Notes: generated by a model not told the origin, from the sequence alone. A DNA stretch of 64,000 bases from Macrostomum lignano (GCA_002269645.1 NIVC01001040.1:65769-129768), one strand, 5' to 3'. Positions 7,823 through 44,314 are shown, counted from the first letter of the stretch. Made by a program: numbers and translations.

Positions 7823-8170
7823 GGACACAGCGGGTCACGGCAAGTCAGGACACAGCGGGTCACGGCAAGTCAGGACACAGCGGGTCACGGCAAGTCAGGA
7901 CACAGCGGGTCACGGCAAGTCAGGACACAGCGGGTCACGGCAAGTCAGGACACAGCGGGTCACGGCAAGTCAGGACACAGCGGGTCACGGCAAGTCAGAA
8001 CACAGCGGGTCACGCCAAGTCAGGACACAGCGGGTCACGGCAAGTCAGGACACAGCGGGTCACGGCAAGTCAGGACACAGCGGGTCACGGCAAGTCAGGA
8101 CACAGCGGGTCACGGCAAGTCAGGACACAGCGGGTCACGGCAAGTCAGGACACAGCGGGTCACGGCAAGC
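7823..8170. repeat. 25-bp minisatellite (gacacagcgggtcacggcaagtcag), ~14 copies
   Basis: Direct periodicity. Confidence 0.95.
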
Positions 8171-9217: not shown

Positions 9218-9703
9218 TCACGATGAGGCACTCAGGAAGCTGTGCCGCAGCAGCTCCGCGGTGTCCGCTCGCTTCCTCGGGTCATAGTCTACGCACCTGA
9301 GGTAGAAGTCCTTCAGGCCAGCTGAGAACGCGTCTGCAATCCGAGGCATCGCCCGCCCTCCGCACCTCACGATGCCGATCCGGAACTGCTGAACGTTCGC
9401 GTCAGGAGGCTGCATGGCCGTCAGCTCATACACGGTGCAGCCGAAGGCCCACACGTCGGTCTTGGCTGAGTACGGAATCGAATCGCCCTCGCCCATGAAC
9501 AGCTCGGGCGCCATGAAGTAGGGGGTGCCTTTGGGATCGACGCCTGTGCTCAGGCCGCAGGTGCCGACGATCTCCTTGGCGAGACCGAAGTCGATCAGCT
9601 TGATGACGCCTTTGCTGGTGAGCATCGCATTGGAGCTCTTGATGTCGCGGTGCAAGATGGCGCCCTCCGGCTGGCAATGCAGGAAGTTCAGGCCTGAGCA
9701 GAT
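9218..9703 (-). CDS. ANK-kinase exon 4 (kinase C-lobe, to stop)
   Basis: Acceptor cacctgcag|ATC; ICSGLNFLH...HRDIKSSN...DFG...APE; 486 nt. Confidence 0.93.
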
Positions 9704-12700
9704 CTGCAGGTGGAGCAGTTTTGAGTAGTAAAGAAAGTGCATGAATTCACCCTCACTGATCCCACACTGATCCCACACTGATCTCACACTGATCCCACAC
9801 TGATCCCACACTGATCCCACACTGATCCCACACTGATCCCACACTGATCCACCCATGCCAGGCAATGCCAGAGAACTCAGAGACACACCTGTCTGGAGAA
9901 GTCCCTGACGCCGGACTCCTTGAACGGCTTTTTCTGACGCTGCATCAGCTCAAAGAGGCTGTGACCCGAGACAAGCTCGGTGAAGATGCACAGCCCATCC
10001 GACTTCTGCTCGCACTTGAGGAACTGCACAATGTTGGGATGCGAGAGTCGCTTGAGGATCTCAACTCCCCGCTTCTCCATCTCGACGGCTTTTTGCAGCT
10101 TCCCCGATTCGCCGGTGCCGCTCAGGGGCAGCACCTTGACAGCCACCGTCTGGTTGCGGTCTGTGAGGGCCTTGTACACCTCACCGAATCCGCCACGACC
10201 GATGAGCTGCTTCTTGTCTTTCTGCAGGATGAAGTCCCAGTCGGTGAAGCTGGGGTCCAGCTGCTTCTTGGCGCTGAAACATGAAATGAAGGAATTGATG
10301 AATTTTGTGTTGCTTGGGGCTTTCTGAGTACTTTGGAGTCACTCAGCCTTCTGCGTCACCAGCCTTCTGCGTCACCACCCTTCTGCGTCACCACCCTTCT
10401 GCGTCACCGCCCTTCTGCGTCACCAGCTTTCTGCTTCACCAGCCTTCTGCGTCACCACCCTTCTGCGTCACCACCCTTCTGCGTCACCACCCTTCTGCGT
10501 CACCACCCTTCTGCGTCAGCGCCCTTCTGCGTCACCACCCTTCTGCGTCACCACCCTTCTGCGTCACCACCCTTCTGCGTCACCACCCTTCTGCGTCACC
10601 ACCCTTCTGCGTCACCACCCTTCTGCGTCACCACCCTTCTGCGTCACCACCCTTCTGCGTCACCACCCTTCTGCGTCACCACCCTTCTGCGTCACCACCC
10701 TTCTGCGTCACCACCCTTCTGCGTCACCACCCTTCTGCGTCACCACCCTTCTGCGTCACCACCCTTCTGCGTCACCACCCTTCTGCGTCACCACCCTTCT
10801 GCGTCACCACCCTTCTGCGTCACCACCCTTCTGCGTCACCACCCTTCTGCGTCACCACCCTTCTGCGTCACCACCCTTCTGCGTCACCACCCTTCTGCGT
10901 CACCACCCTTCTGCGTCACCACCCTTCTGCGTCACCACCCTTCTGCGTCACCACCCTTCTGCGTCACCACCCTTCTGCGTCACCACCCTTCTGCGTCACC
11001 ACCCTTCTGCGTCACCACCCTTCTGCGTCACCACCCTTCTGCGTCACCACCCTTCTGCGTCACCACCCTTCTGCGTCACCACCCTTCTGCGTCACCACCC
11101 TTCTGCCATGAGCATCCTCGGGCGCCATGAAGTGCCAGGTGCCTTTTGGCTGGTTTTGCAGGACTGCAGGTTTTGACGAGTTCACCATCACCAACTGTCG
11201 CCTCATCATTTCTCACCGAGTCTCCTCAGGCAGTCCGACCGGAGTCGGCCCAGGCGGCTGGACGCTCTGTCGAGCTCGTGGGCGGGGACGCGGAGCTGCA
11301 GCGCTGTAGGAAGAGTTTTACGAGTGAGCCCGTTAAACATGTCTGGGTCGCCAAGACGGCACTTAAACTCTGCTAATGCTTCGTGTATAAAAAGCCTTGC
11401 AGATTGAGCTTTGGGTGGCGCTATGTGGACATTGGGGCGCGATCGGGAGATTGCGGCGCCACGAAGAGATTGGAGGCTCTCAAATCATTCAAGTGCCAAT
11501 ATTTTGAACATCACACCAAGTACATTCCTAATAAAATAGGAGAGTTTGAAACTTCGGAGAGTTTGATGGCACTTGAACTCGCTGATGCTTTGTGTTAAAA
11601 AACTGCAGATTGAGCTGTGGGTGGGGGGTTGGGGGCCCATGGGGAGATTAGGAGCGCCATGGGAAGTTTGGGGGCGCTTTGTGGAGATTAGAGGCGCCAT
11701 GGGGGGAGGTTGGGGGAGCCATGGGGAGATTAGAGGCGCCATGGGGAGATTGGAGGCGCCATAGGGAAATTGGAGGCGCCATGGGGAGATTGGAGGCGCC
11801 ATAGGGAAATTGAAAGCGCCATGGGGAGATTGGAGGCGCCATTGGGAGATTGGAGGCGCCATGGGGAGATTGGAGGCGCCATAGGGAAATTGGAAGCGCC
11901 ATGGGGAGATTGGAGGCGCCATTGGGAGATTGGAGGCGCCATGGGGAGATTGGAGGCGCCATAGGGAAATTGGAGGCGCCATGGGGAGATTATAGGCGCC
12001 ATGGGGAGATTGGAGGCGCCATAGGGAAATTGGAGGCGCCATGGGGAGATTGGAGGCGCCATGGGGAGATTGGAGGCGCCATGGGGAGATTGGAGGCGCC
12101 ATGGGGAAATTGGAGGCGCCATGGGGAGATTGGAGGCGCCATGGGGAGATTGGAGGCGCCATGGGGAGGTTGGAGGCGCCATGGGGAGGTTGGAGGCGCC
12201 ATGGGGAGGTTGGGGGCGCCATGGGGAGGTTGGGGGCGCCATGAGGAGCTGCACTGACAGATTCATGACGCCCTCGCTTGACTGCGGCGCTGCTGAGAAT
12301 TTCAGGGCGCCGATCATCAAAGCGCAATGAATTTTCGCCAAACAATATTTTCAGTATTTTCAGTGTCTGGCAGCAGTTCTCAGTCAGGACTCACCCAGCT
12401 GAGGCGGCAGTCGGCGCTGAGCTGCCAGCGGGAGGCCGAGAGGCTTCGAGCTGCCGCTGCGTGGAGGAAATCCAGGCCCGCTTTGCTGACTGGTCTCTAA
12501 AGTAGCAATAACTCTCAACATAATCAGCCGGTGTTTTGCCCTCGTTGTTCTTCAAGCCGAGCATTTCGGCTCCGATTTGGTCAAAAATGAACTGAAGAGA
12601 GTCGACTGGCTGCCACTGAGCGGCCAAATGGACGGCCGTGTCACCTCTAGAGTCAGGAACTGTGAGACAGTCGCTGCCGAGCTCCTTCACCAGCCACTCC

Positions 12701-13974
12701 AGATTTGAATTGTCAGACTTCTTAGCAGCAAAGTGAAATGCTGTTCTATCATCATCTCCCTTCAGCCGAAAGCAGTCAGTTCCGATCTGTCTCTTGATCC
12801 ACTCCAGCGACTCGATGCTCTGATGCTCAGCGGCCAAATGGACGGCCGTGTCACCTCTAGAGTCAGGAACTGTGAGACAGTCGCTGCCGAGCTCCTTCAC
12901 CAGCCACTTCAGATTTGAATTGTCAGACTTCTGAGCAGCAAAGTGAAATGCTGTTCTATCATCATCTCCCTTCAGCTGAAAGCAGTCAGTTCCGATCTGT
13001 CCCTTGATCCACTCCAGCGACTCGATGCCCTGATGCTGAGCGGCCAAATGGACGGCCGTGTTACCGCATTTGTCAGGAACTGTGAGACAGTCGCTGCCGA
13101 GCTCCTTCACCAGCCACTTCAGATTTGAATTGTCAGACTTCTGAGCAGCAATGTGAAATGCTGTTCTATTCCAAAACCCTCCCTTCAGCCGAAAGCAGTC
13201 AGTTCCGATCTGTCTCTTGATCCACTCCAGCGACTCGATGCCCTGATGCTGAGCGGCCAAATGGACGGCCGTGGTACCGTATTCGTTAGGAACTCTGAGA
13301 CAGTCGCTGCCGAGCTCCTTCACCAGCCACTTCAGCATTGAATTGTCCGACTTCTGAGCAGCAAAGTGAAATGCTGTTCTATCCCACAATCCCTTCAGCC
13401 GAAAGCAGTCAATTCCGATCCGTCTCTTGATCCACTCCAGCGACTCGATGCCCTGATGCTGAGCGACCAAATGGACGGCCGTGTCACCGAGTGAGTCAGG
13501 AACTGTGAGACAGTCGCTGCCGAGCTCCTTCACCAGCCACTTCAGACAAGAGTTGCTTTTTCTGTTCATAGCGGCAAAGTGAGCGAATGTCTTTTCCCAT
13601 GTACCGACAATTCTAAAGCAGCCTCTGCCTACCTTCTTTTTAACCAGCTCCATCCAAGACTCGTCCTGATGCTGGGCAGCCAAGTCCACTGGAGTCTCAC
13701 CTCCTAACAAAAAACTGCGATCATTTCTACGTGTCAGACAGTCGGGTCCGAATCTGTCAATCAGCAGCTCCAAGCACGACGAGCTCACCGGCTTGCAGGC
13801 CACGTGATGGGCCAGCGGCATTTTGCGAAGCTCTTCAAAGGGAAAGTCTATCTTGTCGAACCCGCCCACCTCCAGCTCGATGTTGCTGCCGACCTCACCG
13901 CACAGTCGCTGCAGCTCCTCGCTGTCTCCAGCCTCCAGCGCCGCTCTCAGCTTCCGCTCCATCTCTGTTGCCAT
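9218..13974 (-). CDS. Ankyrin-repeat plus STE/MAP3K-like Ser/Thr protein kinase, 4 coding exons, 845 aa
   Basis: join complement(9218..9703, 9889..10273, 11217..11303, 12395..13974) = 2538 nt. All introns are GT-AG with consistent phases 2, 2, 0. Kinase motifs [32 protein letters not shown] and DVWAFG are intact. The start codon (gtagccATGG) is inferred. Confidence 0.88.
9756..9850. repeat. 11-bp intronic tandem repeat (actgatcccac)
   Basis: Direct periodicity inside kinase intron 3. Confidence 0.9.
9889..10273 (-). CDS. ANK-kinase exon 3 (kinase N-lobe)
   Basis: Acceptor catgtttcag|C, donor CAG|gtgtgt; [23 protein letters not shown]...HPNIVQF; 385 nt. Confidence 0.93.
10345..11105. repeat. 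16-bp intronic minisatellite (ttctgcgtcaccaccc), ~47 copies
   Basis: Direct periodicity. Confidence 0.96.
11217..11303 (-). CDS. ANK-kinase exon 2 (Pro-rich linker [29 protein letters not shown])
   Basis: Acceptor ttcctacag, donor CG|gtgaga; 87 nt, symmetric phase 2-2, joins the ankyrin exon to the kinase in frame. Confidence 0.8.
11630..12245. repeat. 20-bp intronic minisatellite (ggcgccatggggagattgga), ~30 copies
   Basis: Direct periodicity. Confidence 0.95.
12395..13974 (-). CDS. ANK-kinase exon 1 (ankyrin-repeat array)
   Basis: Five ~70-aa (210-bp) modules, each with two ankyrin motifs (TAFHFAA and GxTAVHLAA), plus two degenerate N-terminal repeats; donor GG|gtgagt at 12394. Confidence 0.92.
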
Positions 13975-14586
13975 GGCTACACTGCTTCTCCTAGCAGCGC
14001 TTCTCTGCCGATCTGCTGTCTGCCGCAGCTGTTCCACACGGCTTCAAACTGAGTGCTTTGCTCTTCTTCAAGCGAATTTGCCTGCCAGCTCAGCAGCAGC
14101 AGCAAAAGTCCGGCTGTCACGGACTGAAATCTCTGAGCTCTCCTGTGCAGAGAAATTTGTTTAAATGGACTGAGGCCGATTCTCTTCTCTGACCCAGCGG
14201 CTGAGTTTGAGGGCTGATTGGGTGCCAGGGGGCCCGGCAGCTGCTCTGCTCAGCGGGGTGAGAGATGCAGGAGCAGTGAGATGCTGCGAGCTCTGCTGAG
14301 TTAAACAATGAGAGCTGACTGTGGCTGCGTGCTCGGCATAGCAAGTGCATTGTCAGTGGGCAGGGGTGAAGGGGCGGCAGCTGAGACACGAGGGGAGAGA
14401 GATGGAGAGGGGAGGGAGGGCAGGGCTGAGGCCTGGAAACCAAGCGGAGCTCTCTGACGATTTTCAATTTAGTTTGCAATTGTATGGCAAATATTTTGCA
14501 GAAAAATGCTTATGACTGAGGATTTTCTGTTGCTGAACTCGAAATAGATGGAGACTGGTCGCTTGGGTTTGCCAGCGACACTTTAC

Positions 14587-16868: not shown

Positions 16869-17595
16869 TGTTAGTTTCTGTAAAATAGAAAGAGAAGTAT
16901 TCGATAGTAGCTGATACTATCGAAAAAAGCCACAGAACTCTTAACGGTTCCTGGATATTGAAAAGCTCGGTGCAGCCAGCTGTGCTACTGCAAGTACTGA
17001 ATATGGCTCGCTTGACTGCAATCTGCATGAATTTGTGTCTGACTTTGCTGCCTTCACTTCACCCTGCTGTGGCACCTCATCAATGGCGCTTTGTGCTCAA
17101 ATGCAGTTTATTTATAAATTTATTAATAATTTTGCATTTTGTACTCACGGTTTATTTTGCTAATCTTTATACACAGTTCAGGTGTGCATTTTGTAATCCA
17201 CCTTTGATAATCTTTGGATTTATTTATCCGGTGCAACAGACTGACCCTGCTTCTACTCGCCCCGACCCTAGCCATCCAAGCAGCTCCAGACCAGCCGAGC
17301 TCAATGCCCAGAGGACAATGGCGAAGCTGAGGTTTAAGGGCCGAGCCGGCAGCCTGCGAACGCGTGTCAAAAGAAGGCTCGCTGCAAATGCTTTTTTAGG
17401 AGGGGGGGGGGTTGATGGCTGCCTAAAAGCGGCAAAGAGACAAGATGCGTGAGCGCCAACCCTGCCCCGCTCAAACCATTCACTGCTTTGCATTGCGCTT
17501 GTGCTCTCAGCTAAAATTTACTGCCTTTGATATTCGGCACTTCGTGTTTTCAGATGCGAGCCTCCCACTCATATTGGGCGTTTAGAATTAGGGAG

Positions 17596-20500
17596 AGGGG
17601 CAGGGAGAGACAGGCTGGGATGTAAGGTGAGGGGCAGGGAGAGAGACAGGCTGGGATGTAAGGTGAGGGGCAGGGAGAGAGACAGGCTGGGATGTAGGGT
17701 GAGGAGCAGGGAGAGAGACAGGCTGGGATGTAGGGTGAGGGGCAGGGAGAGAAACAGGCTGGGATGTAGGGTGAGGAGCAGGGAGAGAGACAGGCTGGGA
17801 TGTAGGGTGAGGAGCAGGGAGAGAGACAGGCTGGGATGTAGGGTGAGGAGCAGGGAGAGAGACAGGCTGGGATGTAAGGTGAGGGGCAGGGAGAGAGACA
17901 GGCTGGGATGTAGGGTGAGGAGCAGGGAGAGAGACAGGCTGGGATGTAGGGTGAGGGGCAGGGAGAGAAACAGGCTGGGATGTAGGGTGAGGAGCAGGGA
18001 GAGAGACAGGCTGGGATGTAGGGTGAGGAGCAGGGAGAGAGACAGGCTGGGATGTAGGGTGAGGAGCAGGGAGAGAGACAGGCTGAGATGTAGGGTGAGG
18101 GGCAGGGAGAGAGACAGGCTGGGATGTAGGGTGAGGAGCAGGGAGAGAGACAGGCTGGGATGTAGGGTGAGGGGCAGGGAGAGAGACAGGCTGGGATGTA
18201 GGGTGAGGAGCAGGGAGAGAGACAGGCTGGGATGTAGGGTGAGGGGCAGGGAGGGAGAAAGGCTGGGATGTAGGGTGTGGGGCAGGGAGGGAGAAAGGCT
18301 GGGATGTAGGGTGAGGGGCAGGGAGAGAGACCGGCTGGGATGTAGGGTGAGGGGCAGGGAGGGAGAAAGGCTGGGATGTAGGGTGAGGGGCAGGGAGAGA
18401 GACAGGCTGGGATGTAAGGTGAGGGGCAGGGAGAGAGACAGGCTAGGATGTAGGGTGAGGGGCAGGGAGAGAGACAGGCTGGGATGTAGGGTGAGGGGCA
18501 GGGAGAGAAACAGGCTGGGATGTAGGGTGAGGGGCAGGGAGAGAGACAGGCTGGGATGTAGGGTGAGGAGCAGGGAGAGAGACAGGCTGGGATGTAGGGT
18601 GAGGAGCAGGGAGAGAGACAGGCTGGGATGTAGGGTGAGGGGCAGGGAGAGAGACAGGCTAGGATGTAGGGTGAGGAGCAGGGAGAGAGAAAGGCTGGGA
18701 TGTAGGGTGAGGAGCAGGGAGAGAGACAGGCTGGGATGTAGGGTGAGGAGCAGGGAGAGAGACAGGCTGGGATGTAGGGTGAGGGGCAGGGAGGGAGAAA
18801 GGCTGGGATGTAGGGTGTGGGGCAGGGAGGGAGAAAGGCTGGGATGTAGGGTGAGGGGCAGGGAGAGAGACAGGCTGGGATGTAGGGTGAGGGGCAGGGA
18901 GGGAGAAAGGCTGGGATGTAGGGTGAGGGGCAGGGAGAGAGACAGGCTGGGATGTAGGGTGAGGGGCAGGGAGGGAGAAAGGCTGGGATGTAGGGTGAGG
19001 GGCAGGGAGAGAGACAGGCTGGGATGTAGGGTGAGGGGCAGGGAGATAGACAGGCTAGGATGTAGGGTGAGGGGCAGGGAGAGAGACAGGCTGGGATGTA
19101 GGGTGAGGGGCAGGGAGAGACAGGCTGGGATCTAGGGTTAGGGGCAGGGAGAGAGACAGGCTGTGATGTAGGGTGAGGGGCAGTATGAGCGACAGGCTGG
19201 GATGTAGGGTGAGGGGCAGGGAGAGAGACAGGCTGGGATGTAGGGTTAGGCGCGGGGAGATGCAGGCTGGGATGTAGGGTGAGGGGCGGGGAGATACAGG
19301 CTGGGATGTAGGGTGAGGGGCAGGGAGAGAGACCGGCTGGGATGTAGGGTGAGGGGCAGGGAGAGAGACAGGCTGGGATGCAGGGTGAGGGGCAGGGAGG
19401 GAGAAAGGCTGGGATGTAGGGTGAGGGGCAGGGAGAGAGACAGGCTGGGATGTAAGGTGAGGGGCAGGGAGGGAGAAAGGCTGGGATGTAAGGTGAGGGG
19501 CAGGGAGAGAGACAAGCTGGGATGTAGGGTGAGGGGCAGGGAGAGAGACAGGCTGGGATGTAGGGTGAGGAGCAGGGAGAGAGACAGGCTGGGATGTAGG
19601 GTGAGGGGCAGGGAGGGAGAAAGGCTGGGATGTAGGGTGTGGGGCAGGGAGGGAGAAAGGCTGGGATGTAGGGTGAGGGGCAGGGAGAGAGACAGGCTGG
19701 GATGTAGGGTGAGGGGCAGGGAGGGAGAAAGGCTGGGATGTAGGGTGAGGGGCAGGGAGAGAGACAGGCTGGGATGTAGGGTGAGGGGCAGGGAGGGAGA
19801 AAGGCTGGGATGTAGGGTGAGGGGCAGGGAGAGAGACAGGCTGGGATGTAGGGTGAGGGGCTGGGAGATAGACAGGCTAGGATGTAGGGTGAGGGGCAGG
19901 GAGAGAGACAGGCTGGGATGTAGGGTGAGGGGCAGGGAGAGACAGGCTGGGATCTAGGGTTAGGGGCAGGGAGAGAGACAGGCTGTGATGTAGGGTGAGG
20001 GGCAGTATGAGCGACAGGCTGGGATGTAGGGTGAGGGGCAGGGAGAGAGACAGGCTGGGATGTAGGGTTAGGCGCGGGGAGATGCAGGCTGGGATGTAGG
20101 GTGAGGGGCGGGGAGATACAGGCTGGGATGTAGGGTGAGGGGCAGGGAGAGAGACCGGCTGGGATGTAGGGTGAGGGGCAGGGAGAGAGACAGGCTGGGA
20201 TGCAGGGTGAGGGGCAGGGAGGGAGAAAGGCTGGGATGTAGGGTGAGGGGCAGGGAGAGAGACAGGCTGGGATGTAAGGTGAGGGGCAGGGAGGGAGAAA
20301 GGCTGGGATGTAAGGTGAGGGGCAGGGAGAGAGACAAGCTGGGATGTAGGGTGAGGGGCAGGGAGAGAGACAGGCTAGGATGTAGGGTGAGGAGCAGGGA
20401 GAGAGACAGGCTGGGATGTAGGGTGAGGGGCAGGGAGGGAGACAGGCTGGGATCTAGGGTGAGGGGCAGGGAGAGAGACAGGCTGTGATGTAGGGTGAGG

Positions 20501-23500
20501 GGCAGTATGAGCGACAGGCTGGGATGTAGGGTGAGGGGCAGTGAGGGAGACAGGCTGGGATGTAGGGTGAGGCGCGGGGAGATACAGGCTGGGATGTAGG
20601 GTGAGGGGCAGGGAGAGAAACAGGCTGGGATGTAGGGTGAGGGGCAGGGAGAGAGACCGGCTGGGATGTAGGGTGAGGGGCAGGGAGAGAGACAGGCTGG
20701 GATGCAGGGTGAGGGACAAGAAGAGATAGGCTGGGATGTAGGGTGAGGGGCAGGGAGGGAGACAGGCTGGGATGTAGGGTGAGGGGCAGGGAGAGAGACA
20801 GGCTTGGATGTAGGGTGAGGGGCAGGGAGAGAGACAGGCTGGGATGTAGAGTGAGGGGCAGGGAGAGAGACAGGCTGGGATGCAGGGTGAGGGACAAGAA
20901 GAGATAGGCTGGGATGCAGTGTGAGGGACAAGAAGAGATAGGCTGGGATGTAGGGTGAGGGGCAGGGAGGGAGAAAGGCTGGGATGTAGGGTGAGGGGCA
21001 GGGAGAGAGACAGGCTGGGATGTAGGGTGAGGGGCAGGGAGAGAGACAGGCTGGGATGTAGGGTGAGGGGCAGGGAGAGAGACAGGCTGGGATGCAGGGT
21101 GAGGGACAAGAAGAGATAGGCTGGGATGCAGGGTGAGGGACAAGAAGAGATAGGCTGGGATGTAGGGTGAGGGGCAGGGAGAGAGACAGGCTGGGATGTA
21201 GGGTGAGGGGCAGGGAGAGAGAAAGGCTGTGATGTAGGGTGAGGGGCAGTATGAGCGACAGGCTGGGATGTAGGGTGAGGGGCAGTGAGGGAGACAGGCT
21301 GGGATGTAGGGTGAGGCGCGGGGAGATACAGGCTGGGATGTAGGGTGAGGGGCAGGGAGAGAAACAGGCTGGGATGTAGGGTGAGGGGCAGGGAGAGAGA
21401 CCGGCTGGGATGTAGGGTGAGGGGCAGGGAGAGAGACAGGCTGGGATGCAGGGTGAGGGACAAGAAGAGATAGGCTGGGATGTAGGGTGAGGGGCAGGGA
21501 GAGAGACAGGCTGGGATGTAGGGTGAGGGGCAGGGAGGGAGACAGGCTGGGATCTAGGGTGAGGGGCAGGGAGAGAGACAGGCTGGGATGTAGAGTGAGG
21601 GGCAGGGAGAGAGACAGGCTGGGATGCAGGGTGAGGGACAAGAAGAGATAGGCTGGGATGCAGTGTGAGGGACAAGAAGAGATAGGCTGGGATGTAGGGT
21701 GAGGGGCAGGGAGGGAGAAAGGCTGGGATGTAGGGTGAGGGGCAGGGAGAGAGACAGGCTGGGATGTAGGGTGAGGGGCAGGGAGAGAGACAGGCTGGGA
21801 TGTAGGGTAAGGGGCAGGGAGAGAGACAGGCTGGGATGCAGGGTGAGGGACAAGAAGAGATAGGCTGGGATGTAGGGTGAGGGGCAGGGAGGGAGACAGG
21901 CTGGGATGTAGGGTGAGGGGCAGGGAGAGAGACAGGCTTGGATGTAGGGTGAGGGGCAGGGAGAGAGACAGGCTGGGATGTAGGGTAAGGGGCAGGGAGA
22001 GAGACAGGCTGGGATGCAGGGTGAGGGACAAGAAGAGATAGGCTGGGATGTAGGGTGAGGGGCAGGGAGGGAGACAGGCTGGGATGTAGGGTGAGGGGCA
22101 GGGAGAGAGACAGGCTTGGATGTAGGGTGAGGGGCAGGGAGAGAGACAGGCTGGGATGTAGAGTGAGGGGCAGGGAGAGAGACAGGCTGGGATGCAGGGT
22201 GAGGGACAAGAAGAGATAGGCTGGGATGCAGTGTGAGGGACAAGAAGAGATAGGCTGGGATGTAGGGTGAGGGGCAGGGAGGGAGAAAGGCTGGGATGTA
22301 GGGTGAGGGGCAGGGAGAGAGACAGGCTGGGATGTAGGGTGAGGGGCAGGGAGAGAGACAGGCTGGGATGTAGGGTGAGGGGCAGGGAGAGAGACAGGCT
22401 GGGATGCAGGGTGAGGGACAAGAAGAGATAGGCTGGGATGCAGGGTGAGGGACAAGAAGAGATAGGCTGGGATGTAGGGTGAGGGGCAGGGAGAGAGACA
22501 GGCTGGGATGTAGGGTGAGGGGCAGGGAGAGAGAAAGGCTGTGATGTAGGGTGAGGGCAGTATGAGCGACAGGCTGGGATGTAGGGTGAGGGGCAGTGAG
22601 GGAGACAGGCTGGGATGTAGGGTGAGGCGCGGGGAGATACAGGCTGGGATGTAGGGTGAGGGGCAGGGAGAGAAACAGGCTGGGATGTAGGGTGAGGGGC
22701 AGGGAGAGAGACCGGCTGGGATGTAGGGTGAGGGGCAGGGAGAGAGACAGGCTGGGATGCAGGGTGAGGGACAAGAAGAGATAGGCTGGGATGTAGGGTG
22801 AGGGGCAGGGAGAGAGACAGGCTGGGATGTAGGGTGAGGGGCAGGGAGGGAGACAGGCTGGGATCTAGGGTGAGGGGCAGGGAGAGAGACAGGCTGGGAT
22901 GTAGAGTGAGGGGCAGGGAGAGAGACAGGCTGGGATGCAGGGTGAGGGACAAGAAGAGATAGGCTGGGATGCAGTGTGAGGGACAAGAAGAGATAGGCTG
23001 GGATGTAGGGTGAGGGGCAGGGAGGGAGAAAGGCTGGGATGTAGGGTGAGGGGCAGGGAGAGAGACAGGCTGGGATGTAGGGTGAGGGGCAGGGAGGGAG
23101 ACAGGCTGGGATCTAGGGTGAGGGGCAGGGAGAGAGACAGGCTGGGATGTAGAGTGAGGGGCAGGGAGAGAGACAGGCTGGGATGCAGGGTGAGGGACAA
23201 GAAGAGATAGGCTGGGATGCAGTGTGAGGGACAAGAAGAGATAGGCTGGGATGTAGGGTGAGGGGCAGGGAGGGAGAAAGGCTGGGATGTAGGGTGAGGG
23301 GCAGGGAGAGAGACAGGCTGGGATGTAGGGTGAGGGGCAGGGAGAGAGACAGGCTGGGATGTAGGGTGAGGGCAGGGAGAGAGACAGGCTGGGATGTAGG
23401 GTGAGGGGCAGGGAGAGAGAAAGGCTGGGATGTAGGGTGAGGGGCAGGGAGAGAGAAAGGCTGGGATGTAGGGTGAGGGGCAGGGAGAGAGACAGGCTGG

Positions 23501-23558
23501 GATTTAGGGTGAGGAGCAGGGAGAGAGACAGGCTGAGATGTAGGGTGAGAGGCAGGGC
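17596..23558. repeat. 36-bp G-rich minisatellite (gggcagggagagagacaggctgggatgtagggtgag), ~165 copies with higher-order variant blocks
   Basis: Direct periodicity; gives the RGRERDRLGCRV repeat ORFs. Confidence 0.97.
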
Positions 23559-23952
23559 TGGCAAAATACCTTCCAAAATACCTTCAAAATCGCCAATAAA
23601 ACAGCTGCCATCAATCCAATCACTTCATGACTTCATAACTTGCATCACTTCTTGGCTTTCGTAGGCATATAGTCGTTCAGTTCAAAAATAGTTTTAAATC
23701 TCCGCAAACAATATCGCTTACAATACGCTACTCATAGTACTCATAAGAATACCATTTGCCGTTAAAGAGAAGAGCAGCTAGATGGATTTTTTCCAGAAAT
23801 TCGTTTGCACCTGAAGATTCGCTTTGCTGGAGTTTTTTACTCAAAAGCGAATGACAAAACTCTTACACTGCCGTGAGTCGTGCCTCGGCTCTCGGGGTGG
23901 GCGCTCAGTTTTTGAATTTTCCAGCGTCTCCGATGCACCTCACTCTGCATCT

Positions 23953-25213
<1,261 letters not shown>

Positions 25214-25959
25214 CTGCCCAGCTTGTGTTTTGTTGCGCACCTGTAAGAATTCAATTTTATTGCACACTCGAGTCCGCCTCTCCATCGGTTTCATTGTCCG
25301 CATTTGGCTTGTAAAAAACTGGCTTCTCAAGCAGCTGATTGCATTTTATAGCAAATGCTCGCTCAGCTCGAGTTTTGTTTAGCTGCGAGCTTGAGCAGTC
25401 CTGCTCACAGGGCTCTCTTCGCCAGCTGCATGAGCACGCATATCAACTGACAGAATTCAGCAATCCACCCTCGCTTTGGCCCACTGATGTTCCACACTTC
25501 TTTATATTTTTGCCTCCAAGAAGTCCAAAAGCAACAGCCAATCAGATTTTGTTGCCGATGCGCAGATTTTTAGTGGCGATAAAAGTGAAAATTGAATACT
25601 GATTTATTATTTCGAAAACGTTGGACTAACCTTAGAAAATGAGAAACAGTCCATCACAGGCGCGTGTGGTTGGTGCTGACTCACACAGCCATCCTTCAGG
25701 TAGCTGACTGCTCACACAGTCAGTGCAATTACATGTACATTATTTATCCGGTGCAACACACTGACTCAGCAGTTCAGCATTAATAATCTAGTTTTTCATC
25801 TGCATTGCTCAAATAAAAGTATTGCTGTTTCAATGTTTCTGCCAGATCACCAATGGATGACAATGCAGAGCAGCAAATGTAAAGTATGTGCATTTGAGCA
25901 TAAAGTTCTCGGCTGGTGTTTGTCTTTGCTGTTTTGTTCGTGGTTTGGAATCTCAGATT

Positions 25960-27335: not shown

Positions 27336-27389
27336 AACCATCTGATTGTCTCTATTGTGTTTCTCCAACCATCTCCCTTTTACACACCC

Positions 27390-31930: not shown

Positions 31931-32579
31931 GGCTAATAAAGACTTGTTTTCTCCAGTTTCTAGAAAGCTAAATAGGCTAAAAGTGCAGCTGGCCGGCAGC
32001 CCAGCCTCCGCCCGTCATCTCTGAGCACAAAAGCGAAGGTGCAGTGAGGGGAAGGCAGGGTGCTCAAGCACAATGCAGAGTCTCCATTGTGCAAGGCTGG
32101 GGCTGAAAATCATTCGGGAGCAGCCGCCAGTGCAGCCTCCGACAGCTCAGCATCTCTGCAGCCTCATCGCTAATTAAATCTCGCTTTTGCAATGACCTTG
32201 ATTCTCAGTGCCCCTGATATGTCATGCTGTCAAGAGCTGCATTTTCTGAACAGCTGCTGTGTACTGCTGGGATTCGACAGCTCAGCCCCATCTCACTCTG
32301 CATCATTTAGAGCTGCTAGCCTCCTCTCTGCAGAGGCCCTGAGCAGCTCATTGTGCCACCGTACTGACCGCCTTTGTCTCTCATGAAATGCTGAATTACT
32401 TGGCAACTCCTTTGCACCTCATCTTCTCAGCTGCCCGCTTCGGACTGCCTTAGGCTTGGGGTGGGCGCTCAGCCTCGAGTCTCTCAGCATCTCCGCAAAG
32501 CACTGCTCACTGGCCTCTCAGCTCTTGGGTGGTCTGTCTTTCACCTGCATGCACAAGCTCTGTTTATCAGCCACCTGAA

Positions 32580-40410: not shown

Positions 40411-41634
40411 ATCACCAAGCAAAACCGGCCGCTCCAAGAGCCGCTCCGCTCCCTCACAGCCCATCGCTCTCGCAGTCAGGATGAGGCACTCAGGAAGCTG
40501 TGCCGCAGCAGCTCCGCGGTGTCCGCTCGCTTCCTCGGGTCATAGTCTACGCACCTGAGGTAGAAGTCCTTCAGGCCGGCTGAGAACCCGTCCGCAATCC
40601 GAGGCATCTTCTGCTTTCTAAACCGCAGAATGCCAATATTTTCAATTGGCTGGTCTCCATCAGGAGGCTGCATGGCCGTCAGCTCATACACGGTGCAGCC
40701 GAAGGCCCACACGTCGGTCTTGGCTGAGTACAGAAGTGATTTCAATTTTGTGTCGAACAGCTCCGGAGCCATGAAGTACATGGTACCTTTTGGTCCGAAG
40801 CCTGTGCTAAGACCGCAGGTCTTCTCAATCTCCTTGGCCAGACCGAAGTCGATCAGCTTGATGACGCCCTCGTTGGTGAGCATAATATTGGAGCTCTTAA
40901 TGTCACGGTGCAAGATAGCGCCCTCCGGCTGGCAGTGCAGAAAGTTCAGGCCTGAGCAGATCTGCAGGAGCAGTTTTGAGCAGTCATGAGACCCCATACC
41001 TGCTCCCACCCACACTGATCCCACACTAATCCCACACTGATCCCACACTGATCCCACACTGATCCCACACTGATCCCACACTGATCCCACACAGATCCCA
41101 CGCTGATCCCACACTGATCCCACACTAATCCCACATCCCACCCATGCCAGGCAATGCCAGAGAACTCAGACACGCACCTGTCTGGAGAAGTCCCTGACCC
41201 CGGACTCCTTGAACGGCTTTTTTTGACGCTGCATCAGCTCAAAGAGGCTGTGACCCGAGACCAGCTCGGTGAAGATGTACAGCCCATCCGACTTCTGCTC
41301 GCACTTGAGGAACTGCAGGATGTTGGGATGCGAGAGTCGCTTGAGGATCTCAACTCCCCGCTTCTCCATCTCGACGGCTCTCTGCAGCTTCCCCGATTGG
41401 CCGGTGCCGCTCAGGGGCAGCACCTTGACAGCCACCGTCTGGTTGCGGTCTGTGAGGGCCTTGTACACCTCACCGAATCCGCCACGGCCGATGAGCTGCT
41501 TCTTGTCGTCCTGCAGAATGAAGTCCCAGTCGGTGAAGCTGGGGTCCAGCTGCTTCTTGGCGCTGAAACATGAAATGAAGGAATTGATGAATTTTGTGTT
41601 GCTTGGGGCTTTCTGAGTACTTTGGAGTCACTCA

Positions 41635-41930
41635 GCCTTCTGCGTCACTACTCTTATGCGTCACCATCCTTATGCGTCACCACCCTTCTGCGTCACCAGC
41701 CTTCTGCGTCAACCACCCTTCTGCGTCACCACCCTTCTGCGTCACCAACCTTCTGCGTCACCAGCCTTCTGCGTCACCACCCTTCTGCGTCACCACCCTT
41801 CTGCGTCACCACCCTTCTGCGTCACCACCCTTCTGCGTCACCACCCTTCTGCGTCACCACCCTTCTGCGTCACCACCCTTCTGCGTCACCACCCTTCTGC
41901 GTCACCACCCTTCTGCGTCACCACCCTTCT
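41635..41930. repeat. 16-bp intronic minisatellite, ~18 copies
   Basis: Same unit as 10345-11105. Confidence 0.93.
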
Positions 41931-42479
41931 GCCATGAGCATCCTCGGGTGCCATGAAGTGCCAGGTTCCTTTTGGCTGGGTGCCTGCGCTCAGACTGCAG
42001 GTTTTGACGAGTTCACCAACTGTCGCCTCATCATTTCTCACCGAGTCTCCTCAGGCAGTCCGACCGGAGTCGGCCCAGTCGGCTGGACGCTCTGTCGAGC
42101 TCGTGGGCGGGGACGCGGAGCTGCAGCGCTGTAGGAAGAGTTTTACGAGTGAGCCGTTAAACATGTCTGGGTCGCCAAGACGGCACTTGAACTCTGCTAA
42201 TGCTTCGTGAATAAGAAGCCCTGCAGATTGAGCTTTGGGTGGCGCTATATGGACATTGGGGACGCGATCGGGAGATAGCGGCGCCACGAAGAGATTTTGA
42301 ACATATTATATTTAACATATTACATATTACAACATATTACATATTATATTATATTTTGAACATCACACCAAGTACATTCCTACTAAAATCGGAGAGTTTG
42401 AAACTTCGGAGAGTTTGATGGCACTTGAACTCGCTGATGCTTTGTGTTAAAAAACTCCTGCAGATTGAGATGTGGGTGG

Positions 42480-42690
42480 GGGGCGCCATGAGGAGATTGG
42501 GGGCGCCATGGGAGATTGGAGGCGCCATGGGGAGGTTTAAGTCGCCATGGGGAGATTGGAGGCGCCATGGGGAGGTTGGGAGGCGCCATGGGGAGGTTGA
42601 GGGCGCCATGGGGAGGTTGGGGGCGCCATGGGGAGGTTGGGAGGCGCCATGGGGAGGTTGAGGCGCCATGCGAGGTTGGGGGCGCCATGA
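42480..42690. repeat. 20-bp intronic minisatellite (ggcgccatgggga...), ~10 copies
   Basis: Same unit as 11630-12245. Confidence 0.92.
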
Positions 42691-44314
42691 GGAGCTGCAC
42701 TGACAGATTCATGACGCCCTCGCTTGACTGCTGCGCTGCTGAGAATTTCAGGGCGCCGATCATCAAAGCGCAATGAATTTTCGCCAAACAATATTTTCAG
42801 TATTTTCAGTGTCAGGCAGCAGCTCTCAGTCAAGACTCACCCAGCTGAGGCGGCAGTCGGCGCTGAGCTGCCAGCAGGAGGCCGAGAGGCTTCGAGCCGC
42901 CGCTGCGTAAAGGAAATCCAGGCCCGCTTTTCTGACTGGTCTCGATAGCGATAACTCTCAACATAATCAGCCAGTGTTTCGCCCTTGTTGTTCTTCAAGC
43001 TGAACATTTCGGCTCCGATTTGGTCAAAAATGAACTGAAGAGAGCCGACTGGCTGCAACTGAGCGGCCAAATGGACGGCCGTGTTCCCGTATTCGTCAGG
43101 AACTGTGAGACAGTCGCTGCCGAGCTCCTTCACCAGCCACTTCAGATTTGAATTGTCAGACTTCTGAGCAGCAAAGTGAAATGCTGTTCCATCATCATCT
43201 CCCTTCAGCTGAAAGCAGTCAGTTCCGATCTGTCCCTTGATCCACTCCAGCGACTCGATGCCCTGATGCTCAGCGGCCAAATGGACGGCCGTGTTACCGC
43301 ATTTGTCAGGAACTGTGAGACAGTCGCTGCCGAGCTCCTTCACCAGCCACTTCAGCTTTGAATTGTCAGACTCCTCAGCAGCAAAGTGAAATGCCGTTTT
43401 ATCCAACCATCCCTTCAGCCGAAAGCAGTCAGTTCCGATCTGTCTCTTGATCCACTCCAGCGACTCGATGCCCTGATGCCAAGCAGCCAAATGGACGGCC
43501 GTGGTACCGTATCTGAGTTATGCTGAGTTAAACAATGAGAGCTGACTGTGGCTGCGTGCTCGGCATAGCAAGTGCATTGCCAGTGGGCAGGGGTGAAGGG
43601 GCGGCAGCTGAGACACGAGGGGAGAGAGATGGAGGGGGGAGGGAGGGCAGGGCTGAGGCCTGGAAACCAAGCGGAGCTCTCTGACGATTTTCAATTCAGT
43701 TTGCAATTGTATGGCAAAAATTTTGCAGAAAAATGCTTATAACTGAGGATTTTTTGTTGCTGAACTCGAAACAGATGGAGAATGGTCGCTTGGGTTTGCC
43801 AGCGACACTTTAAGTCAGTATCTAACAGGTGACGTCAGTATCTAACAGGTGACATCAGTGTCTAACATGTCACTCTAGTATCTAACAGGTGACGTCAGTA
43901 TCTAACAGGTGACACCAGTATCTAACAGGTGACATCAGTATCTAACAGGTGACATCAGTATCAAAAAGGTGACATCAGTATCTAACAGGTGACATCGATA
44001 TCTAACAGGTGACATAAGTGTCTCACAGCTGACATCAGTATCTAATACGTGACTTCTTTATCTAACAGGTGACGTCAGTATCTAACAGGTGACGTCAGTA
44101 TCTAACAGGTGACATCAGTATCATACAAGTGACATCAGTATCTAACAGGCGATATCGGTATCAAACACGTGACACCATTATCTAACAGGTGACATCAGTA
44201 TCTAACAGGTGACATCAGTATCATACAAGTGACATCAGTATCTAACAGGCGATATCGGTATCAAACACGTGACACCATTATCTAACAGGTGACATCAGTA
44301 TCTAACAGGTGACA

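What the first reader, a model, noticed from the sequence alone, without database searches (positions are those of the whole stretch)
9218..13974. Ankyrin-array MAP3K-like kinase whose repeats vary at DARPin-type binding positions (candidate variable sensor kinase)
Seen: five near-identical 210-bp di-ankyrin modules with a constant scaffold ([25 protein letters not shown]). Variation sits at the D-x-x-G-x hairpin (DSLGD, NEYGT, DKCGN, DSRGD; unit B adds DEYGN), the partner hairpin (KGLWDR, KGGFWNR, KGDDDR; unit B KGWLDK, KGDDDG) and after helix 1 (QH, EH, QW; unit B WH, QL, EE). Unit B also has one module fewer after the GTT repeat. Established: these are the ankyrin-groove positions randomised in designed ankyrin binders. 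The catalytic domain reads like STE11/MAP3K19-type kinases (ALT..QTVAVK, HRDIKxxNxML..GVIKLIDFG), which to my knowledge do not normally carry an N-terminal ankyrin array. Inference: a recombining, ligand-diversifying receptor-kinase family, possibly immune.
Basis: partly seen in the sequence, partly recalled or inferred. Interest (0 to 1): 0.8.

Follow-up and report, generated by a model that had tools for sequence, protein, structure and literature searches.

The report
Hypervariable ankyrin-array kinase family in flatworm
A flatworm (Macrostomum lignano) gene joins a string of near-identical ankyrin repeats, which differ almost only at their ligand-contact residues, to an active MAP-kinase-cascade-type kinase, so it looks like one of a large family of variable intracellular recognition proteins whose function is still untested.

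Summary
On the minus strand, 13974..9218 is an intact GT-AG gene (3 exons plus an optional 87-nt cassette exon). It encodes about 816 aa: an ankyrin (ANK) solenoid, a disordered linker and a kinase with all catalytic motifs present.

The array has four full and one half-diverged 210-bp di-ankyrin modules. The DNA is 93-99.7% identical to Macrostomum lignano contigs.

In 33 modules from six loci, variability sits at ANK positions 2, 3, 5 and 13 of both repeats. Positions 14 and 33 are conserved. Scaffold codons are 96.6% identical at nucleotide level; the 12 a-priori binder-position codons are 71.7%. Their dN is 0.41 against scaffold dS 0.034, and this repeats within each locus. A conservative event count is weaker (p=0.07).

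Module number ranges from 2 to 13. One reference gene is an exact mosaic of the window's two copies. The same ANK cassettes are fused to a second kinase type, tandem kinases or a caspase.

The kinase is STE-group and MEKK-like, but STE11 versus STE20 is unresolved. No orthologue was found outside Macrostomum. Copy B is 5'-truncated.

A sensor or immune role is inference only. The closest analogues are fungal NLR repeats with high internal conservation and RNase L.

The parts
9218..13974 (-). Unit A gene, start codon to stop: ANK array, linker and STE-type kinase. 816 aa without the cassette exon, 845 aa with it.
   Evidence: In-frame spliced CDS with GT-AG introns. 88% identical to M. lignano BOX15_Mlig013667g2. 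AF2 mean pLDDT 87.6.
13546..13974 (-). N-terminal cap plus a diverged di-ANK module (MATEMERK...[10 protein letters not shown]).
   Evidence: A weak module-HMM hit at 13770..13564. Helical repeat in the AF2 model.
12703..13545 (-). Four full 210/213-bp di-ankyrin modules: 13545-13336, 13335-13123, 13122-12913 and 12912-12703.
   Evidence: TRF period 210. Module HMM scores 156-160 bits. Amino-acid identity between modules 83-89%.
12532..12702 (-). Fifth module. Its first repeat is conserved; its second half diverges into the C-terminal cap.
   Evidence: Module HMM positions 1-57.
12395..12531 (-). End of exon 1: helical tail and Pro/Ser/Ala-rich linker. The splice donor follows at 12394.
   Evidence: Sequence. 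AF2 pLDDT below 50 for residues 514-529.
11217..11303 (-). Optional 87-nt, frame-preserving cassette exon ([29 protein letters not shown]) inside intron 1.
   Evidence: AG/GT flanks. The peptide is present in paralogues P0003, P0004, P0006, P0008 and P0011 and absent from P0001 and P0002.
9889..10273 (-). Kinase exon: juxta-kinase segment, Gly loop [12 protein letters not shown] lysine, helix C and hinge.
9218..9703 (-). Kinase exon: [11 protein letters not shown], activation segment, [10 protein letters not shown]-lobe and stop codon.
10338..12248 (.). Intron 1 minisatellites: 16-mer x48 (10338-11106) and 20-mer x31 (11629-12248). Intron 2 carries an 11-mer x9 at 9750-9850.
   Evidence: TRF. 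Copy numbers differ in unit B (x19, x11 and x11.5).
42841..43511 (-). Unit B truncated ANK exon: 0.7 + 1 full + terminal module. The deletion junction is at about 43521-43511, with an in-frame TAA upstream and no start codon.
40476..42128 (-). Unit B cassette exon (42128-42042) and kinase exons (41562-41178 and 40961-40476), all open with intact splice sites.
   Evidence: 871/871 nt identical to the reference gene for P0008. dN/dS against unit A is 0.38.

Best explanation
What it is (shown): one member of a large, clustered, Macrostomum-specific gene family of cytosolic proteins. An ankyrin solenoid built from near-identical 70-aa di-ankyrin cassettes is tethered by a flexible linker to an active STE-group (MEKK-like) kinase.

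How the array evolves (shown, with selection inferred from the pattern):
- The cassettes are kept almost identical at the DNA level and change in number (2-13). I attribute this to unequal crossing-over and gene conversion within and between paralogues.
- About eight residues per cassette differ in nearly every cassette. They lie at the hairpin tips and the end of the inner helix (ANK positions 2, 3, 5 and 13 of both repeats), which are the canonical ligand-contact positions.
- This points to diversifying selection on a long, combinatorial binding groove.

How it works (inferred):
- Each paralogue's groove binds a different, probably fast-evolving protein ligand.
- Ligand binding releases or clusters the kinase, as N-terminal regulatory domains do in MEKK/ASK-type kinases and as the ANK domain does in RNase L.
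- The kinase then autophosphorylates its activation loop and signals downstream.
- The same cassette arrays are found on a second kinase type, on tandem kinases and on a caspase. The array therefore behaves as a portable recognition module feeding signalling or death effectors.
- This is the logic of an innate non-self or danger sensor, although an immune role is not shown.
For: Gene model and catalytic motifs.

Organism and family:
- DNA is 93-99.7% identical to M. lignano contigs.
- Dozens of M. lignano paralogues were found and no closer relative elsewhere.
- Loci are clustered 67-80 kb apart, and two copies lie about 30 kb apart in the window.

Hypervariability:
- Entropy across 33 modules peaks only at alignment columns 18, 19, 21, 29, 53, 55 and 65.
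- The 12 a-priori binder-position codons have dN 0.41. Scaffold dS is 0.034 and scaffold dN is 0.035. The permutation test gives p < 1e-5.
- The pattern repeats within each of 6 loci, with dN(surface)/dS(scaffold) between 4.8 and 37.
- 31 distinct surface combinations occur in 33 modules.
- The same positions vary in an independent subfamily.
- In the AF2 model (pLDDT above 93 in the array) these residues sit in the loop before the inner helix and at that helix's C-terminal end.

Concerted evolution and recombination:
- Scaffold dS among modules is 0.034, against kinase dS of 0.225 between copies A and B.
- Module number ranges from 2 to 13.
- The reference gene for P0008 matches unit A at 517/518 nt in the ANK 3' end and unit B at 871/871 nt in the kinase exons.
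- P0013 carries the same array on a different kinase type. P0017 (kinase) and P0026 (caspase) share identical modules.

Kinase under purifying selection: omega 0.38.

Architecture analogue: RNase L is recovered by fold search.
Against: - There are no expression, ligand or activity data, so 'sensor' and 'immune' are inference.
- ANK positions 2, 3, 5 and 13 are intrinsically tolerant of change.
- The conservative tree-free event count gives omega of only 1.3-2.7, and Fisher p=0.07.
- Scaffold omega is about 1.0, so constraint on the framework is not demonstrated by this measure.
- Copy B in the window is 5'-truncated, and some family members may be pseudogenes.
- Arrays of near-identical repeats are prone to assembly error, so part of the copy-number and mosaic evidence could be artefact.
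Groove mapping rests on the sequence register to the ANK consensus and on DSSP, not on measured surface geometry.
Confidence: 0.55

Rival explanations
1. Substrate-adaptor model. The ANK groove does not sense anything. It recruits different endogenous substrates or scaffolds to a constitutively regulated kinase, as ankyrin regulatory subunits do for phosphatase 6. The family expanded to diversify housekeeping or developmental phosphorylation targets.
For: Differences between kinase copies A and B cluster in substrate-facing regions: the activation segment, the loop after APE and the helix-G region. This suggests co-variation of the catalytic docking surface with the array. PP6 ANK regulatory subunits are among the distant ANK hits.
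Against: Endogenous conserved substrates would not drive hypervariability with a near-identical scaffold. They would also not explain fusion of the same cassettes to a caspase.
Confidence: 0.2
2. The family evolves fast because of reproductive or genomic conflict rather than pathogen sensing. Examples are sperm or seminal biology in this sexually selected hermaphrodite, or control of selfish elements. Diversification tracks conspecific or intragenomic partners.
For: The family is lineage-specific, clustered and rapidly diversifying. It sits in an extremely repeat-rich region. From my own knowledge, kinase families are known to expand in other invertebrates with sperm-specific expression.
Against: There are no tissue data. 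The proteins are cytosolic with no secretion signal. Caspase-bearing relatives fit death signalling better.
Confidence: 0.12
3. Neutral explanation. Recently amplified tandem cassettes are homogenised by gene conversion, and the only sites free to drift are the structurally unconstrained surface positions. There is no diversifying selection, and many copies are decaying.
For: Positions 2, 3, 5 and 13 are the least constrained ANK positions. Scaffold omega is about 1. The event-based test is marginal. Unit B is truncated.
Against: Neutral sites cannot exceed the synonymous rate. Surface dN (0.41) is 12 times scaffold dS, and this holds in 6 of 6 loci. Hypervariable codons differ at 2-3 nucleotides while adjacent third positions are invariant. 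All catalytic motifs, ORFs and splice sites are intact in A and in the paralogues. Kinase omega is 0.38.
Confidence: 0.1
4. Assembly artefact. The module number differences, the mosaic gene and the truncation of unit B come from mis-assembly of near-identical repeats, not from biology.
For: The region is about half minisatellite. The reference contig and the window disagree only inside the gene body while the flanks are 99.7% identical.
Against: The hypervariability pattern is seen inside every single uninterrupted ORF, independently of copy number. The truncation junction is a clean single breakpoint.
Confidence: 0.03

Closest known systems
Fungal NLR (STAND) proteins with ANK/TPR/WD repeats of high internal conservation (Dyrka et al. 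2014, PMC4986451; Podospora HET-E/D/R nwd family)
   Same: The repeats are near-identical to each other (about 85% or more). Repeat number is polymorphic. There is concerted evolution with shuffling within and between paralogues. A few hypervariable or positively selected positions per repeat map to the concave ANK surface (hairpin/loop and inner helix). The same repeat arrays are combined with different effector domains.
   Different: There is no NACHT/NB-ARC nucleotide-binding domain. The effector is C-terminal and is a STE-type kinase (or a caspase). The host is an animal, not a fungus. The repeat unit is a 70-aa pair of two non-equivalent ANK repeats.
RNase L (2-5A-dependent ribonuclease)
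   Same: An N-terminal ANK sensor domain is followed by a protein-kinase fold. Foldseek aligns about 650 columns of the whole model to RNase L structures. It is an innate-immune sensor in which ligand binding to the ANK repeats drives dimerisation and activation (from my own knowledge).
   Different: Identity is only 15-17% and TM 0.25-0.31, with a different domain orientation. RNase L has a pseudokinase and a C-terminal KEN ribonuclease, is single-copy and is not hypervariable. Here the kinase has every catalytic motif and nothing follows it.
STE11/MEKK-type MAP3Ks (plant ANP/NPK1/MEKK1, animal MAP3K2/3/5/19) and STE20 kinases (STK25, SLK, MST4)
   Same: These are the best sequence and fold matches for the catalytic domain. 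Plant MEKKs are 36-37% identical at E about 1e-43. STK25/SLK score 4.5e-35, MAP3K2 3.7e-34 and ASK1 7.5e-34. Foldseek finds STK10, SLK, ASK1, TNIK and MAP4K4. The HRDIKxxN and GTPxxMAPE motifs are shared.
   Different: Identity to any of them is at most 37%. STE11 versus STE20 is not resolved. From my own knowledge, none of these carries an N-terminal ANK array.
Platyhelminth ANK-prodomain caspases, and the M. lignano caspase with a kinase-like prodomain (PMC11463336)
   Same: A flatworm-specific fusion of an ANK array to a signalling or death effector. P0026 carries the same di-ANK cassette type as kinase P0017, plus Peptidase_C14 (7e-16).
   Different: The paper treats ANK caspases as unique to parasitic flatworms. 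It does not describe ANK-kinases, cassette hypervariability or concerted evolution.
Designed ankyrin repeat proteins (DARPin libraries)
   Same: A consensus-like constant framework with diversity confined to hairpin and inner-helix positions. DARPins are recovered as sequence matches. Natural variation here sits at library positions 2, 3, 5 and 13.
   Different: Positions 14 and 33 are not varied. The repeats are 35 aa long and come in two alternating types. This is natural and germline-encoded, not synthetic.
Animal ANK-kinases ILK, TNNI3K, RIPK4/ANKK1 and DAPK; Giardia NEK-ANK expansion (from my own knowledge)
   Same: ANK repeats and a kinase or pseudokinase are on one polypeptide. Giardia shows that ANK-kinase families can expand in a single lineage.
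   Different: Those kinases are TKL, CAMK or NEK group, and none appears among the best 60 PDB matches apart from NEK1/7 at lower scores. They are conserved single-copy orthologues (ILK, TNNI3K) or have the ANK array C-terminal (RIPK4, DAPK). No cassette hypervariability is reported for them.

Membership tests
Ankyrin repeat proteins | 33-aa helix-turn-helix-hairpin repeats matching the ANK profiles and stacking into a solenoid. | tested here: met
   Ank_4 3.9e-39, Ank_2 1.2e-37 and Ank 1.7e-29. AF2 gives paired helices throughout residues 54-512 with pLDDT above 90. PDB matches are to NompC, espin, TRPA1 and DARPins.
Eukaryotic protein kinase, catalytically competent | Gly loop, VAIK lysine, helix-C glutamate, HRD, catalytic asparagine, DFG, APE, and the subdomain IX aspartate and XI arginine. 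| tested here: met
   [40 protein letters not shown] and RKRA are all present in the spliced product. The nearly invariant columns in alignment A1 agree. Activity itself was not assayed.
STE group kinases | The catalytic domain is most similar to STE7/11/20 kinases. | tested here: met
   The first 36 of the 60 listed PDB sequence hits are STE20 or STE11 kinases; NEK and PKR follow at lower scores. Kinase-domain Foldseek hits are STK10, SLK, ASK1, TNIK, MAP4K4 and TAO3; WNK1 (not STE) also appears at rank 16, and RNase L entries are whole-architecture matches.
STE11/MEKK MAP3K (including MAP3K19) | Clusters inside STE11 rather than STE20 in a kinome phylogeny, and phosphorylates a MAP2K. | tested here: inconclusive
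   The best non-Macrostomum database hits are plant MEKK/STE11 proteins at 36-37% identity. In the PDB, however, STE20 (4.5e-35) and MAP3K2/5 (about 4-8e-34) are tied. No full kinome tree was built. Substrate specificity cannot be tested here.
NLR / STAND receptors with repeats of high internal conservation | A central NACHT or NB-ARC NTPase domain. | tested here: not met
   No NACHT or NB-ARC hit in the window protein or in the relatives scanned.
NLR / STAND receptors with repeats of high internal conservation | Repeats at least about 85% identical to each other over at least 100 aa, variable repeat number, and hypervariable positions on the binding surface. | tested here: met
   Mean module identity is 86% over 280-910 aa. 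There are 2-13 modules per locus. Variability is confined to positions 2, 3, 5 and 13 with dN much greater than dS. Polymorphism between individuals was not tested.
RNase L | ANK + pseudokinase + C-terminal KEN ribonuclease domain, with 2-5A binding. | tested here: not met
   The protein ends 4 residues after the kinase domain and has all catalytic residues. There is only an architecture-level fold match: TM 0.25-0.31, 15-17% identity.
Transmembrane receptor kinases | A signal peptide and a membrane-spanning helix between the ligand-binding and kinase domains. | tested here: not met
   The highest 19-residue Kyte-Doolittle mean is 1.25 and lies inside the kinase core. The linker is polar and disordered.
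TKL-group ANK kinases (ILK, TNNI3K, RIPK4/ANKK1) | The kinase domain belongs to the TKL group or is orthologous to these genes. | tested here: not met
   None appears among the 60 best PDB sequence matches or the 50 best fold matches, which are dominated by STE-group kinases. No direct pairwise comparison was run.
Platyhelminth ANK-caspases | An ANK prodomain followed by a caspase p20/p10 domain. | tested here: not met
   The window gene has a kinase, not a caspase. Its relative P0026 does meet this feature (Peptidase_C14 7e-16).

The most novel reading that the evidence does not exclude
Macrostomum carries an intracellular recognition repertoire of a kind not described in animals. Germline arrays of hypervariable ankyrin cassettes are continually reshuffled between clustered paralogues by gene conversion and unequal crossing-over. 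They are plugged onto alternative effectors (a STE-type kinase, a second kinase type, tandem kinases, a caspase). Together they would form a non-NLR, non-LRR innate immune or allorecognition system, an animal counterpart of fungal NLRs with highly conserved repeats. Cassette exchange might possibly even occur somatically.
Probability: 0.3. Interest if true: 0.85.

Novelty: new variant of a known kind. Interest (0 to 1): 0.65.

Why it matters
Flatworm immunity is poorly understood, and no diversified receptor family is known there. This family would be a third repeat scaffold, after LRR and the fungal WD/TPR/ANK repeats, used for variable recognition. It is joined directly to a kinase or caspase output without a NOD domain.

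M. lignano has transgenesis, RNAi and long-read genomes. The predictions are therefore directly testable: allelic hypervariability, induction by infection, ligand-dependent kinase activation and cassette exchange.

It is also a natural counterpart of designed ankyrin binder libraries, since diversity sits at four of the six library positions. That could inform binder design and the study of concerted evolution under diversifying selection.

Tried and rejected
1. Prokaryotic origin or horizontal transfer. The first whole-protein search listed bacterial Ser/Thr kinases after the Macrostomum hits. The kinase-only search showed plant MEKKs are closer. The gene has GT-AG introns, so this was rejected.

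2. Transmembrane receptor. There is no hydrophobic segment.

3. NLR membership. There is no NACHT or NB-ARC domain.

4. The architecture exists elsewhere. The distant high-scoring hits P0258 and P0261 (the latter from an oomycete) turned out to be multi-kinase proteins without ANK repeats. Only an unnamed transcript from two SRA runs (P0257, 35% identity) has ANK plus kinase.

5. Transposon or virus cargo. Seven other long ORFs of the window have no Pfam match, and most long ORFs are translated minisatellite.

6. Unit B as a full second copy. Rejected. Its 5' end is missing, and there is no in-frame ATG before the cap.

7. A templated A-specific mutagenesis pattern, as in diversity-generating retroelements. 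Codons at hypervariable sites change at all three positions and all bases, with one codon per residue. There is no such signature.

8. Literature. Searches for the gene identifiers found nothing. Three further searches for M. lignano ankyrin, kinase-family-expansion and immune-receptor papers turned up no description of this family.

9. Three-dimensional mapping of the variable sites.

Full report
**1. What is at the coordinates**

The window is eukaryotic and rich in minisatellites. The finding's range, 13974..9218, is exactly the start-to-stop span of a minus-strand gene.
- Pfam finds ankyrin repeats in ORF 14037..12391 (Ank_4 3.9e-39). It finds the two halves of a protein kinase domain in 10179..9877 and 9886..9218.
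- Reading the sequence gives canonical splice sites...GCTGG|GTGAGT at 12395/12394, TTTCAG|CGCC at 10273, GACAG|GTGTGT at 9889 and CTGCAG|ATC at 9703.
- The joined exons are in frame. From the ATG at 13974 the product is 816 aa.
- An extra 87-nt exon with AG/GT flanks lies in intron 1 at 11303..11217. It encodes [29 protein letters not shown]. That peptide is present in some annotated paralogues and absent in others, so I treat it as a cassette exon.
- All kinase catalytic motifs are present: [23 protein letters not shown] and GTPYFMAPE.
- There is no hydrophobic segment. The highest 19-residue Kyte-Doolittle mean is 1.25. The protein is therefore cytosolic.

**2. Organism and copies**

- The best protein hits are all Macrostomum lignano 'hypothetical protein / protein kinase domain-containing' entries. 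The top hit, P0001, is 88% identical.
- At the DNA level the gene with its introns and flanks is 93-96% identical to contig NIVC01000085.1.
- The flanks of the second copy are 99.3-99.7% identical to NIVC01001041.1. The window is therefore M. lignano, from another haplotype, homeologue or assembly.
- The window holds two copies about 30 kb apart in a tandem segmental duplication, plus the start of a third unit.
- Copy B (43511..40476) keeps open kinase exons and splice sites but has lost about 1.2 kb at its 5' end. Upstream sequence is joined into the middle of a module (...TAACTCAGATAC GGT ACC ACG = [13 protein letters not shown]). An in-frame TAA lies just before it and there is no ATG before the cap. 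As it stands it is a truncated copy.

**3. The repeats**

- Tandem Repeats Finder gives a period of 210 bp and 4.4 copies at 12616-13546.
- A module HMM finds four full 70/71-aa modules, a fifth whose second half becomes the C-terminal cap, and a diverged module upstream.
- Each module is two non-equivalent ANK repeats.
- In five M. lignano reference loci fetched for comparison, the number of full modules in the uninterrupted genomic ORF is 4, 3, 5, 13 and 3. The 13-module locus is annotated with only 5.

**4. Where the variation is**

I aligned 33 full modules from the window and the five loci.
- Shannon entropy above 1.4 bits occurs only at alignment columns 18, 19, 21 and 29 (first repeat) and 53, 55 and 65 (second repeat). 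Most other columns are invariant.
- I anchored both repeats without gaps on the D-x-x-G-x-T-x-x-H-x-A-A-x-x consensus. The variable columns are then ANK positions 2, 3, 5 and 13 in the first repeat and positions 2, 3 and 13 in the second; position 5 of the second repeat varies only modestly (about 1 bit).
- Positions 14 and 33, which are also randomised in designed ankyrin binders (my own knowledge of the Binz/Plückthun design), are conserved here.
- In the AF2 model (mean pLDDT 87.6, array above 93), these residues lie in the loop just before the inner helix (residues 161, 162, 164 and 196, 197) and at the C-terminal end of that helix (172, 207). That is the hairpin and inner-helix face that forms the ANK binding groove.
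- An independent, more divergent subfamily (P0017, P0026) varies at the same kind of positions: 3, 5, 13 and 14 in the first repeat and 2, 3, 10 and 13 in the second.

**5. Is it selection?**

I fixed the test class in advance as the six designed-binder positions of each repeat, 12 codons in all.
- Nei-Gojobori over all module pairs gives dN 0.41 and dS 0.146 for this class (ratio 2.8). The other 58 codons give dN 0.035 and dS 0.034. Class dN divided by scaffold dS is 12.
- None of 100,000 random sets of 12 columns reaches the observed non-synonymous diversity.
- Nucleotide identity is 96.6% in scaffold codons and 71.7% in the 12 codons. The contrast holds within each of the six loci separately, with ratios from 4.8 to 37; the window alone gives 37.
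- Hypervariable codons differ at two or three bases while neighbouring third positions never vary. Each residue is usually encoded by a single codon.
- 31 of 33 modules have a unique surface combination.
- Pairs are not independent events, so I also counted tree-free minimum events. The 12 codons have at least 43 non-synonymous and at least 8 synonymous events. The 58 scaffold codons have at least 38 and at least 17. Non-synonymous events per site are 5.3 times higher in the class. However, omega is only 1.3 within the class and 2.7 against the pooled synonymous rate, and Fisher p is 0.07.
- My reading: localisation of variability is certain. Diversifying selection is well supported but not proven. 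Scaffold omega is about 1, which I cannot fully explain. Part of it comes from semi-variable columns 41, 45, 49, 52, 56, 62 and 71.

**6. Recombination and concerted evolution**

- Scaffold dS among modules, across loci, is 0.034. The kinase exons of copies A and B differ by dS 0.225 (dN 0.086, omega 0.38). The array is therefore homogenised much faster than the rest of the gene.
- The reference gene for P0008 has unit-B flanks (99.7% identical). Its last full module, terminal module and linker match unit A at 517/518 nt. Its kinase exons match unit B at 871/871 nt. The ANK exon of the window's own unit B differs from it by 6-8% and in module content.
- P0013 has the same array on a different kinase subtype (HRDINCSN), in a compact 3.5-kb gene.
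- P0017 (kinase) and P0026 (Peptidase_C14 7e-16, in a 2.2-kb gene) share identical modules.
- P0243 has an ANK array plus two kinase domains.
- Assembly error could contribute to some of this. It cannot explain the within-ORF pattern.

**7. Family size and distribution**

- The word-indexed searches and the exhaustive HMMER search together give at least 40 M. lignano gene models in at least 20 clusters at 50% identity. Members are clustered on contigs, 67 kb and about 80 kb apart.
- Among the 20 top-150 representatives I looked up, 12 are named M. lignano. The others are a Thraustotheca (oomycete) kinase, a manakin (Pipra) PAK3-like protein, a mayfly (Neocloeon) protein and five unnamed metagenome or SRA sequences.
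- Of the non-Macrostomum hits I scanned, P0258, P0261, P0275 and P0287 have kinase domains but no ANK repeats. Only P0257, an unnamed transcript from two SRA runs at 35% identity, has both.
- The nearest named non-Macrostomum kinases are plant MEKK/STE11 MAP3Ks at 36-37% identity.
- Against solved structures, STE20 kinases (STK25, SLK; 4.5e-35) and STE11-type kinases (MAP3K2 3.7e-34, ASK1 7.5e-34) are tied. Foldseek agrees.
- The kinase is therefore STE-group and MEKK-like, but the subfamily is unresolved.

**8. Mechanism**

Shown:
- A long ANK groove with a combinatorial hypervariable surface.
- A disordered linker of about 50 aa with an optional Pro/Arg-rich insert.
- A kinase with all catalytic motifs, under purifying selection.

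Inferred:
- The groove binds paralogue-specific protein ligands.
- Binding relieves autoinhibition or clusters the kinase for activation-loop autophosphorylation. This is how N-terminal regulatory regions control MEKK/ASK kinases, and how the ANK domain of RNase L converts ligand binding into dimerisation of its kinase-like domain. RNase L is the only solved ANK-plus-kinase-fold architecture that the fold search recovers.
- Reuse of the same cassettes on caspase and tandem-kinase effectors argues that the array is a portable recognition module for signalling or death outputs.
- Whether the ligands are pathogens, conspecific molecules, selfish elements or endogenous substrates is open.

**9. 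Comparison with the known**

- The evolutionary mode matches fungal NLR repeats with high internal conservation: near-identical ANK/TPR/WD repeats, repeat-number polymorphism, concerted evolution, and positive selection on the concave surface (PMC4986451). There is no NOD domain here, however, so this is not an NLR.
- Platyhelminth ANK-caspases, and an M. lignano caspase with a kinase-like prodomain, have been reported (PMC11463336). I found no description of the ANK-kinase family or its hypervariability.
- The genes are in public databases only as hypothetical proteins.
- I rate it a new variant of a known kind: a variable repeat-array sensor coupled to an effector.

**10. Verdict**

- MAP3K subfamily assignment and any sensor or immune function remain unproven.
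- Interest 0.65.

Noticed in passing
window 1-64000 (e.g. 17589-23557, 23950-25215, 25962-27339, 30611-31934, 51294-53866, 57037-58356): About half of the window is minisatellite arrays: a 36-mer x167, a 1.27-kb (TC)n tract, a 40-mer, a 12-mer x111 and others. They recur in the same order in tandem units of about 30 kb starting near 5.5 kb, 35.3 kb and 60.8 kb, with different copy numbers.
   Followed up: partly
window 9750-9850, 10338-11106, 11629-12248 versus 41009-41135, 41627-41932, 42475-42694: Both introns of the kinase gene are filled with minisatellites (11-mer, 16-mer and 20-mer). Copy numbers differ between copies A and B: x9/x48/x31 against x11.5/x19/x11.
   Followed up: partly
L005 10835-14300 (NIVC01001041.1, gene for P0008) versus window units A and B: The reference-assembly gene is an exact mosaic. 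Its ANK 3' end and linker match unit A at 517/518 nt, and its kinase exons match unit B at 871/871 nt, with unit-B flanks. This is either a real gene-conversion or crossover haplotype, or an assembly chimera.
   Followed up: yes
L004 10415-13321 (NIVC01000558.1): The genomic ANK exon is one open frame with 13 full modules. The annotated protein P0004 contains only 5, so public annotation under-calls these arrays.
   Followed up: partly
window 9218-9703 versus 40476-40961: Amino-acid differences between kinase copies A and B cluster in three patches. These are the activation segment ([18 protein letters not shown] / [18 protein letters not shown]), the loop after APE (FMGEGDSIP / FDTKLKSLL) and the helix-G region ([18 protein letters not shown] / [18 protein letters not shown]). 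This suggests two kinase subtypes with different docking surfaces.
   Followed up: partly
P0243 (BOX15_Mlig002250, five gene models) and P0026 / L007 3001-5175: Relatives carry the ANK array with two tandem kinase domains, or with a caspase p20 domain. This is modular effector swapping in the wider family.
   Followed up: partly
window 7823-8169 and P0020: UniProt entry P0020 (924 aa) translates the 25-mer minisatellite (GHGKSGHSGSRQVRTQRVTA...) and reverse-strand kinase sequence as protein. This is an annotation artefact of the older assembly.
   Followed up: no
L008, L009 (SRR28338164, SRR28338163): An intron-less 3.2-kb contig from two sequencing runs of unknown organism encodes an 877-aa ANK-plus-kinase protein 35% identical to the window protein. 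Among the hits whose source or domains I checked, it is the only ANK-plus-kinase relative not labelled M. lignano.
   Followed up: partly
L003 31072-33050: A separate 385-aa ANK-only gene lies on the opposite strand about 3 kb downstream of the P0003 ANK-kinase gene.
   Followed up: no
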